Shown here: positions 47,481 to 48,299 of the stretch, one piece after another | Numbering within the stretch: position 1 is the stretch's first letter | Layout: every line of letters starts with the position of its first letter | Assembly: GCF_006345805.1 (NCBI RefSeq) | Contig: NC_043004.1 | Coordinates: 100,936,001 to 101,000,000, forward strand | DNA: 64,000 bases | Direction of reading: 5' to 3' | Origin: Octopus sinensis | Taxonomy: Eukaryota | The notes under the pieces: generated by a model | Seen by the model: only the letters and a program-made list of their open reading frames with translations | The model's database searches: none | What the model was told of the DNA's origin: nothing | Position numbers and translations under genes: made by a program

Positions 47481-47920
47481 GCAAGTATGTATTTGGTTGT
47501 TGGCGAATTGGTGCCAACACCATTTGCAACGGGGAAATAATTTCGAGAATAAAGTATTCTTCAAAACTGAATTATTAATTAAATGAAAGTTTTACAAGAG
47601 GACAGCTGCGAAAACGAGTTACTGCTTCTTTTTACAATATATCTATTTTCGTATTTGTTATCAAATAGATGCCACTGAACACTTTGGCAAGAAACTCACG
47701 AGTGAAAAGTGATCAGTGACAGTAGAGCTCTTGTGAATTGCTTCCAGTTTGCAGTTGTTGGTGGTGGTTGTTTGAAAAGTTTCTTATACCAAAGAACTCG
47801 AACGTTCTATGTAGACAATATTATTATAGATTTAATTTGAAAATAACTTTTTGATTTAGTTTGTAGCTGCTCTAAGAAAATTAAAACTTCTTTGCGACAT
47901 TCACATTTTACCCTTCCGCA

Positions 47921-48046
47921 ATGAACCAGCAAAAGATTCAGAAAATTCTAAACAGTATGAAGAAGAATATGGACTATCCAATTTGTTTGGATTTAATGAC
48001 TAACCCAGTTTCTACAACATGTAATCACCACTTCTGCAAGGAGTGA
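47921..48046 (+). pseudogene. BRCA1: BRCA1-like N-terminal RING finger exon (disrupted or possibly edited)
   Basis: MNQQKIQKILNSMKKNMDYPICLDLMTNPVSTTCNHHFCKE* aligns by eye to BRCA1 [37 protein letters not shown]. Acceptor-like TTTGTAG at ~47859 and donor CG|GTAAGG at 48051/48052. First Cys is TAT; a later Cys position is TGA. Confidence 0.72.
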
Positions 48047-48299
48047 AACCGGTAAGGTGAATGAACATCTTTTAGAATTGCATTTTCAAGCCTGCTTTCG
48101 TATATAATTCCACTCGTGCGGTACCCTACAACTCCACTTTGTTATATATATATATATATATAATCATATGAGTATACGCATGGTAATAAATATGTACATG
48201 TACAAATATGCATGTGTGGGTGCGTGTGTGAGTGAATTTGGGGAAGTGATAATCCCCTCGAAATCAGTTTTGTCTTTCATACATTCCAAATCGATTCTT

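What the first reader, a model, noticed from the sequence alone, without database searches (positions are those of the whole stretch)
47860..48060. Isolated BRCA1-like RING exon whose first Cys is genomically Tyr (TAT): pseudogene or A-to-I restorative editing?
Seen: ATG 47921 opens MNQQKIQKILNSMKKNMD-Y-PICLDLMTNPVSTTCNHHFCKE-TGA, bounded by an acceptor-like TTTGTAG (~47859) and a strong donor CG|GTAAGG (48052). Established: the BRCA1 RING starts ...[31 protein letters not shown], and coleoid cephalopods recode mRNA extensively by A-to-I editing. Inference: TAT (47975-47977) is one A-to-G change from TGT (Cys), and TGA (48044-48046) is one A-to-G change from TGG (Trp), so editing could reopen the frame, although it would not restore that second Cys. 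In human BRCA1 an intron falls after TGC AA, and the G-GAGTG here could be a broken donor. A decayed duplicate exon is the simpler explanation; I found no further BRCA1 exons in the window.
Basis: partly seen in the sequence, partly recalled or inferred. Interest (0 to 1): 0.7.

Follow-up and report, generated by a model that had tools for sequence, protein, structure and literature searches.

The report
Broken first coding exon of BRCA1
This is a real first coding exon of a BRCA1-type DNA-repair gene, but it has two disabling defects and no other BRCA1 exon nearby, so it is most likely a decaying gene remnant, not a case of RNA editing repairing a gene.

Summary
ORF 47921-48046 (+) reads MNQQKIQKILNSMKKNMDYPICLDLMTNPVSTTCNHHFCKE*. 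TAT is at 47975-47977, TGA at 48044-48046 and a strong GTAAGG donor at 48052.

The BRCA1 call holds. The best solved-structure hits are BRCA1 RINGs.

New points:
- The exon is ancestral coding exons A and B fused. Oyster, abalone and chiton all have an intron inside the second RING Cys codon, and it is absent here.
- Homology ends where those genes have a phase-2 intron (TGC AG|GTAAG). The window reads TGC [AAG GAG TGA AAC] CG|GTAAGG. I read this as a 12-nt in-frame insertion, carrying the stop, in front of the old donor.
- Tyr replaces a Cys present in all 22 unconditioned orthologues, and the neighbouring LE has become MD.
- No second RING half or later BRCA1 exon was detected anywhere in the 64 kb.

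Editing rescue is not supported. No dsRNA partner was found. The stop's A follows a G. TGA to TGG would give C-x6-C, which is not a RING.

Verdict: an ordinary pseudo-exon or null allele. I could not test whether an intact BRCA1 exists elsewhere in the genome.

The parts
47860..47866 (+). Acceptor-like TTTGTAG. It would make 47867-47920 a 54-nt 5' untranslated part of the exon.
   Evidence: Pyrimidine fraction is 0.63, and several other AGs nearby look just as good. Use as an acceptor is inferred, not shown.
47921..48037 (+). BRCA1-homologous coding sequence, Met1 to Cys39. It covers the N-terminal helix plus the first half of the C3HC4 RING, equivalent to human residues about 6-44. It corresponds to ancestral coding exons A and B fused, with no intron at CCA ATT TGT|TTG (about 47985/47986).
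   Evidence: Searches give the similarity; abalone aligns Met1 to Met1. Searches show that oyster, abalone and chiton all have an intron ..ATT TG|GT.. here.
47969..47977 (+). ATG GAC TAT = Met-Asp-Tyr, where orthologues have Leu-Glu-Cys. TAT 47975-47977 replaces the first zinc ligand (human C24, zinc site I).
   Evidence: Leu in 42/47 and Glu in 43/47 orthologues. The Cys count in that call was fixed by the selection pattern. Searches give the unconditioned evidence: all 22 aligned orthologues have Cys.
48038..48049 (+). AAG GAG TGA AAC: 12 nt between Cys39 and the CG|GT donor, containing the in-frame TGA (48044-48046). I read it as an in-frame insertion. The alternative is former intron sequence read through after loss of a donor at 48040.
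   Evidence: One search shows orthologues TGC AG|GTAAG against window TGC [12 nt] CG|GTAAGG, in the same phase 2. One search gives the phases. This is inference from the alignment.
48050..48057 (+). CG|GTAAGG: the Arg codon fragment plus a strong 5' splice site (9.1 bits, phase 2). This is probably the ancestral exon B donor.
   Evidence: One search gives the score and phase. One search shows that donors this strong occur once per about 3.4 kb. One search shows the same G|GTAAG in three molluscs.
48057..48062 (+). A second strong donor-like site, AAG|GTGAAT (8.6 bits, phase 1).
48043..48048 (+). Weak donor-like GGA|GTGAAA (0.4 bits, phase 2). It would remove the TGA from the mRNA but would give FCKE+FC, a C-x3-C spacing.
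   Evidence: I considered it and judged it unlikely to be used.

Best explanation
This is the first coding exon of a BRCA1 homologue. It runs from the start codon through the N-terminal helix and the first half of the RING finger, and in this DNA it is no longer able to encode a working RING.

Two independent lesions hit it:
1. The first zinc-binding Cys is Tyr (TGT to TAT), and the two residues before it have also changed.
2. Twelve extra in-frame bases (AAG GAG TGA AAC), containing a stop codon, sit between the last exon-encoded Cys and the conserved phase-2 splice donor.

If the locus is transcribed and spliced at the strong donor, the mRNA ends the reading frame after 41 codons and would be a target for nonsense-mediated decay.

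It is therefore a pseudo-exon. It could be the remnant of a BRCA1 gene decaying in place or a partial genomic duplicate of one. Which of the two it is cannot be decided from this window.

Shown: the homology, the lesions, the intron positions in relatives, and the absence of detectable further BRCA1 exons in the window. Inferred: the 12-nt insertion model, the use of the donor, and the non-function.
For: - Family identity: BRCA1 RING structures are the best PDB matches. They include sequences named BRCA1 from Saccostrea, Mya, Haliotis, Batillaria, Saccoglossus and Hydra.
- Lesion 1: Tyr where all 22 aligned orthologues have Cys. LEC has become MDY, a cluster of three changes in the most conserved motif. 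Substitutions of human C24 and C47 are recombination-deficient or partly deficient (PMC9973406).
- Lesion 2: orthologues end exon B with TGC AG|GTAAG in phase 2. The window has TGC + 12 nt containing TGA + CG|GTAAGG in phase 2. A donor this strong next to the end of homology has a chance probability of about 0.01.
- Isolation: tblastn with human BRCA1 and 27 invertebrate BRCA1-like proteins finds only this exon. A profile of the second RING half plus the following helix finds nothing in any frame (best E=1.1, wrong strand). No C..C...C..C motif lies downstream.
- Surroundings: transposon remnants and microsatellites.
- Two lesions of different kinds, a substitution and a 12-nt insertion, within 70 nt argue against a simple sequencing error.
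Against: - Apart from the lesions the exon is well preserved. The ATG, K15, I21, C22, L23, P29, C34, H36, F38 and C39 are all kept, and there is no frameshift. Decay is therefore recent, or the exon is still under some constraint.
- Only 16 kb lie downstream, and large invertebrate genomes can have longer introns. The rest of a gene may lie outside the window.
- No genome, reads or RNA of the source organism were available. An intact copy elsewhere, transcription and splice-site use are all untested.
- No closer relative than 59-63% identity was found among 1.84 billion representative proteins. The expected 'intact paralogue' has therefore not been seen either.
Confidence: 0.6

Rival explanations
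1. A live BRCA1 locus with a naturally degenerate or bypassed RING. The rest of the gene lies beyond the window. Translation starts downstream to give a RING-less protein, or an alternative donor is used. This exon then acts only as a 5' leader or short upstream ORF.
For: The exon is otherwise well preserved, and the start codon position matches abalone exactly. The strong phase-2 donor is retained. No intact close paralogue was seen in the protein universe searched. Mollusc BRCA1 genes span 11-53 kb even in smaller genomes.
Against: No downstream exon was detected within 16 kb. The only donor that avoids the stop is very weak (0.4 bits, against 9.1 and 8.6 for its neighbours) and would give C-x3-C. 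Every BRCA1 orthologue retrieved keeps a complete RING.
Confidence: 0.15
2. An assembly or sequencing artefact, or a null allele on the assembled haplotype. The organism's real or other allele has TGT and lacks the 12 nt.
For: The lesions are few and the exon looks 'young'. The region is flanked by microsatellites that complicate assembly.
Against: The exon and its flanks (47479-48142) are unique, non-repetitive sequence within the window. A G-to-A substitution plus a 12-nt non-homopolymer insertion are not typical read errors, and there are two of them within 70 nt. The adjacent L-to-M and E-to-D changes also point to real divergence.
Confidence: 0.12
3. Restorative A-to-I editing. ADAR converts TAT to TGT (Tyr to Cys) and TGA to TGG in the mRNA, reopening a functional BRCA1 frame.
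For: TAT is one A-to-G change from the ancestral Cys codon, and the A at 47976 has a favourable 5' U. Restorative editing after G-to-A substitution is a described phenomenon in coleoids (PMC6881472).
Against: - The region folds no better than shuffles (z=+0.56 for 245 nt, -1.42 for 801 nt).
- The longest complementary stretch within 6 kb is 11-13 nt, and A47976 sits only in a 6-bp hairpin.
- A48046 follows a G, which ADARs disfavour (established knowledge).
- TGG would give FCKEWNR, so C44 and C47 would be six residues apart, not two, and zinc site I could not form.
- High editing is reported only in neural tissue, with a median restorative level below 2.5%. BRCA1 acts in dividing and germ cells.
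- BRCA1 is not in the supplementary text files held for those two editing papers.
- The coleoid origin of the window is itself unverified.
Confidence: 0.03
4. A fragment of a processed (retro-copied) BRCA1 mRNA.
For: The intron that splits the second RING Cys codon in human, oyster, abalone and chiton is missing.
Against: Homology stops exactly at the next ancestral intron position and is followed by a strong donor, not by exon C sequence. No poly(A) tail or target-site duplication was seen. Lineage-specific loss of these introns occurs in real genes: L001 has the whole RING in one ORF.
Confidence: 0.05
5. An exon of a different RING family (TRIM-like or other), not BRCA1.
For: Pfam sees only generic RING models. 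Multi-RING TRIM-like proteins top the summed-score list.
Against: Those top scores come from 3-5 repeated RINGs matching only residues 13-40. By single segment, all of the best 45 are BRCA1 orthologues, and their matches include the N-terminal helix and the start codon. PDB BRCA1 hits are about 4000-fold better in E-value than TRIM hits.
Confidence: 0.03

Closest known systems
BRCA1 orthologues of molluscs and other invertebrates (e.g. Haliotis asinina/rufescens, Saccostrea cucullata XP_062578620.1, Mya arenaria, Branchiostoma floridae)
   Same: 50-59% identity from the start codon to FC(K/R). The same N-terminal helix plus C-x2-C-x11-C-x-H-x2-C layout. The same phase-2 intron after the FC+Arg/Lys codon, with a G|GTAAG donor.
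   Different: Tyr in place of the first Cys. A 12-nt stop-containing segment before the donor. The intron inside the second Cys codon is absent. No second RING half, helix or BRCT exons were detected within the window.
Human BRCA1 exons 2-3 (RING; structures 1JM7, 7LYB, 8GRQ)
   Same: 48% identity over 42 residues, and the best PDB match.
   Different: Human exons 2 and 3 are separate; here they are fused. The window carries the equivalent of a C24Y change plus a premature stop before C47. Changes at these two residues are recombination-deficient or partly deficient in human assays (PMC9973406).
Restorative ('harm-permitting') A-to-I recoding in coleoid cephalopods (Jiang & Zhang 2019, PMC6881472)
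   Same: A genomic A where the ancestral state is G, at a nonsynonymous, conserved site (47976).
   Different: No RNA evidence. No dsRNA substrate is predicted. The second lesion cannot be repaired by A-to-G. BRCA1 is not a neural-specific gene.
Unitary or duplicated unprocessed pseudogenes (pseudo-exons)
   Same: An isolated exon with retained splice signals, a few disabling lesions and a transposon-rich neighbourhood.
   Different: Only one exon is visible. The parent or remaining gene has not been located.

Membership tests
BRCA1 (orthologue or derived copy) | N-terminal helix followed by a C3HC4 RING whose best matches are BRCA1 orthologues | tested here: met
   All of the best 45 single-segment hits are BRCA1 orthologues, and PDB BRCA1 scores E=1.4e-10.
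BRCA1 (orthologue or derived copy) | All zinc ligands of the first RING half present (C24, C27, C39, H41, C44 in human numbering) | tested here: not met
   Four of five are present; the C24 equivalent is Tyr.
BRCA1 (orthologue or derived copy) | Second RING half (C47, C61, C64) and the C-terminal helix of the BARD1-binding bundle encoded downstream | tested here: not met
   Not found anywhere in the 64 kb. It may lie beyond the window.
BRCA1 (orthologue or derived copy) | Tandem BRCT domains at the C-terminus | tested here: not met
   tblastn with full-length orthologues finds no BRCT-like segment in the window. It cannot be tested outside the window.
BRCA1 (orthologue or derived copy) | Conserved phase-2 intron after the FC+(Arg/Lys) codon | tested here: met
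   The donor CG|GTAAGG is in phase 2, displaced by 12 nt.
Restorative A-to-I editing site | Genomic A where the ancestral or orthologous state is G, and editing restores the ancestral residue | tested here: inconclusive
   Met for 47976 (Tyr to Cys). Not met for 48046 (stop to Trp, and the position is not homologous to a Trp).
Restorative A-to-I editing site | Double-stranded RNA substrate around the site | tested here: not met
   Folding z-scores are +0.56 and -1.42. No complement longer than 13 nt lies within 6 kb, and there is only a 6-bp local hairpin.
Restorative A-to-I editing site | A/G mismatches between RNA and DNA | not testable with these tools
   No reads of the source organism are available.
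Processed pseudogene | All introns absent, exons contiguous, poly(A) tail and target-site duplications | tested here: not met
   One intron is absent. However, homology stops at the next intron position with a donor, and exon C does not follow.

The most novel reading that the evidence does not exclude
This is the only BRCA1 locus of the source lineage (possibly a coleoid cephalopod), and its RING is disabled in the germline DNA. Either the lineage has lost BRCA1 RING/BARD1-dependent function, as some animal lineages have lost BRCA1 altogether, or expression depends on RNA-level rescue (Tyr-to-Cys editing at 47976 plus splicing that avoids the TGA).
Probability: 0.1. Interest if true: 0.65.

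Novelty: new member of a known kind. Interest (0 to 1): 0.2.

Why it matters
As it stands this is an ordinary decayed exon. Its main use is for annotation: it marks where a BRCA1 gene is or was, and it warns gene predictors not to build a RING-bearing model from it.

It would matter more if genome-wide search showed no intact BRCA1. That would document lineage-specific loss of the BRCA1 RING in a large-genome invertebrate. It would then raise the question of how homologous recombination and BARD1 function are maintained there.

The comparison also adds a small evolutionary point. The two RING introns (inside the Cys27 codon and after FC-Arg/Lys, both phase 2) are shared by human, bivalve, gastropod and chiton. 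The first of them has been lost in this lineage.

Tried and rejected
- Word-indexed homologue search with the 41-aa peptide found no candidate.
- A profile of N-termini returned only proteins of 146 aa or less and nothing closer than 65%.
- A profile of five full-length mollusc BRCA1 proteins was swamped by low-complexity words and returned six molluscs only. All three searches are now spent without finding a cephalopod BRCA1.
- Exact look-ups of the 41-aa ORF and of two transposon ORFs in public assemblies found nothing on record, so the source organism stays unidentified.
- The metagenome scan returned one unrelated eukaryotic locus, L001. It was useful only in showing an intron-free RING.
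- Literature searches for BRCA1 in cephalopods or among editing sites found nothing.
- Rfam and tRNA scans of the window found nothing.
- TGA as a mutated Cys47 codon: rejected. In the orthologues examined that codon is in the next exon, and the following Asn-Arg does not fit the always hydrophobic position 48.
- TGA as selenocysteine: rejected. There is no basis for it, and the codon lies outside the homologous region.
- The weak donor GGA|GTGAAA as the real exon end: rejected, because it scores 0.4 bits and would give C-x3-C.
- Capture by a transposon: no terminal repeats or second copy were found.

Full report
**1. The observation**

- An ATG at 47921 opens a 41-codon frame, MNQQKIQKILNSMKKNMDYPICLDLMTNPVSTTCNHHFCKE, closed by TGA at 48044-48046.
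- TAT lies at 47975-47977.
- TTTGTAG lies at 47860-47866.
- CG|GTAAGG has its first intron base at 48052.
- An in-frame TAA at 47882 excludes a longer N-terminus.

**2. Family assignment**

Pfam recognises only generic RING models. The finer comparisons all point to BRCA1.
- Against all PDB sequences, the four best matches are BRCA1 RING chains (E=1.4e-10 to 3e-9, query residues 4-40). The best TRIM is about 4000 times weaker in E-value.
- An exhaustive phmmer search of 1.84 billion representative proteins gave 95 hits at E<=1e-3.
- The few hits with higher summed scores are proteins with 3-5 repeated RINGs that match only residues 13-40.
The top 45 are all BRCA1 orthologues whose matches begin at residue 1-5.
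- Source names confirm BRCA1 in Saccostrea, Mya, Haliotis, Batillaria, Saccoglossus and Hydra. The amphioxus and Argopecten models carry other automatic names.
- Abalone BRCA1 aligns Met1 to Met1, so 47921 is the orthologous start codon.
- Identity to the best relatives is 50-59%, and to human 48%. No closer relative exists in the libraries searched.

**3. Exon-intron comparison**

I fetched genomic loci for oyster, abalone and chiton BRCA1 and placed their N-terminal exons. All three share the human layout:
- exon A runs from the ATG to ..E-C-x-I-TG|GT (phase 2, inside the second RING Cys codon);
- exon B is 54 nt and ends ..TTY TGC AG|GTAAG (phase 2, inside the Arg codon);
- exon C begins G-TTC-TGC.

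The window differs in two ways.
- The A/B intron is absent (CCA ATT TGT TTG is continuous), so the exon is A and B fused. Such loss is not exceptional: an unrelated eukaryotic contig (L001) encodes the whole RING in one frame.
- At the 3' end the window reads TTC TGC AAG GAG TGA AAC CG|GTAAGG.

The strong donor at 48052 scores 9.1 bits on a generic metazoan matrix and is in phase 2. It follows a CG fragment that would complete an Arg codon, and it has the same G|GTAAG as the molluscs. Donors of at least 8.5 bits occur once per about 1.5 kb on this strand, so finding one within 20 nt of the end of homology has a chance probability of about 0.01.

The most economical reading is that this is the ancestral exon B donor. 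Twelve bases (48038-48049, AAG GAG TGA AAC) would then have been inserted in frame between Cys39 (human C44) and Arg, bringing a stop codon with them. This is my inference.

It needs a second coincidence: a strong same-phase donor 12 nt further on.

Either way, an mRNA spliced at 48052 or 48057 terminates after 41 codons. The only donor that would exclude the TGA (GGA|GTGAAA at 48043) scores 0.4 bits and would produce C-x3-C.

**4. The Tyr**

In the 22 aligned orthologues, and in all N-termini inspected, this position is Cys. It is the equivalent of human C24, a zinc site I ligand.

The two preceding residues are also unusual: Met for Leu (Leu in 42/47) and Asp for Glu (Glu in 43/47). Thr33 replaces Lys/Arg, which 39/47 orthologues have. 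The Cys count was fixed by my selection pattern, so searches are the unconditioned evidence.

All other invariant or near-invariant positions are intact (K15, I21, C22, L23, P29, C34, H36, F38, C39).

In human BRCA1, C24R and C47G are recombination-deficient in one assay and partly deficient in another (PMC9973406).

**5. Is the rest of the gene here?**

No further BRCA1 exon was detected.
- A profile of the second RING half plus the following helix, built from 49 orthologues, was searched against every stop-to-stop piece of at least 12 aa in six frames. The best hit was E=1.1, on the wrong strand.
- Motif scans were also empty.

The exon and its flanks (47479-48142) are single-copy within the window. 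They lie among microsatellites, SINE-like repeats and transposon remnants.

Only 16 kb follow the exon. The corresponding B/C intron is 0.2-4 kb in the three molluscs but could be much longer in a large genome, so absence from the window is suggestive only.

**6. The editing hypothesis**

TAT to TGT would restore the ancestral Cys, and A47976 has a 5' U. The rest of the evidence is against rescue.
- The 245-nt and 801-nt contexts fold no better than dinucleotide shuffles (z=+0.56 and -1.42).
- The longest reverse-complementary stretch to the exon within 6 kb on either side is 11-13 nt.
- A47976 is paired only in a 6-bp hairpin.
- A48046 follows a G, the neighbour ADARs disfavour (established knowledge).
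- TGA to TGG would yield FCKEWNR. The fourth and fifth ligands would then be six residues apart, where every RING needs two, so zinc site I still could not form.
- Jiang & Zhang (PMC6881472) report that high editing activity is seen only in neural tissue and that median restorative editing levels are below 2.5%. A ligand of an essential repair protein in dividing cells would need near-complete editing.
- BRCA1 does not appear in the supplementary text files held for the two coleoid editing papers checked.
- I could not confirm that the window is from a cephalopod at all.

**7. Verdict**

The feature is real and correctly named as BRCA1-like, but it is ordinary. It is a first coding exon carrying two independent disabling lesions of different kinds, with no partner exons in view.

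I put about 0.6 on a pseudo-exon, meaning either a relic of a decaying gene or a partial duplicate. The rivals are:
- about 0.15 on a live locus whose RING is bypassed;
- about 0.12 on an artefact or null allele;
- about 0.05 on a retro-copy fragment;
- about 0.03 on editing rescue;
- about 0.03 on another RING family.

The decisive data are outside these tools: whole-genome tblastn, raw reads, RNA-seq and sister-species exons.

Noticed in passing
window 8651-9698 (+): Remnants of a piggyBac-type transposase in two separate frames. Pfam DDE_Tnp_1_7 matches at E=1.2e-19 and 2.3e-10, covering profile positions 18-125 and 260-349. The copy is broken by stops or frameshifts.
   Followed up: partly
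window 842-1771 (-): A decayed reverse-transcriptase-like region with in-frame stops. It includes a 146-aa ORF ending in a ..FYGLFKIHK.. motif. It matched a transposon-like insert in one fish BRCA1 model by tblastn (E=0.002). Pfam found nothing.
   Followed up: partly
window 15801-17344 (+): A string of ORF pieces that look like one decayed retroelement. From memory they resemble Penelope-like elements with a Cys-rich, GIY-YIG-like tail (NYNAKCNLRNCNFKDKTCCPLEGKC...). There is no Pfam hit, so this is unconfirmed.
   Followed up: partly
window 56528-56833 (-) and 59863-60285 (-): LINE reverse-transcriptase-like fragments (..DVIYFDVAKAFDKV....LLYGSETWTLSKKLERRLDG..), seen only by eye in the six-frame pieces. 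There is no Pfam hit.
   Followed up: no
window 46464-46650 and 47278-47463; also e.g. 20026-20235, 29994-30221, 36176-35964, 58839-58555: Several families of short interspersed repeats recur across the window in both orientations. The two copies just upstream of the exon are 86-95% identical. They suggest a SINE-rich genome. ARAGORN finds no tRNA.
   Followed up: partly
window 4279-5019, 26791-27676, 7368-8324, 50244-51025: Very long microsatellite and low-complexity tracts, including trinucleotide runs that give poly-Asp, poly-Ile or poly-Ser ORFs and (TGTA)n/(GATA)n arrays. They create many spurious long ORFs.
   Followed up: no
L001 5437-5770 (contig MKWU01010205.1): An unidentified eukaryote in a metagenome collection encodes a BRCA1-like RING ([40 protein letters not shown]) in one uninterrupted frame. 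It lacks both ancestral RING introns.
   Followed up: partly
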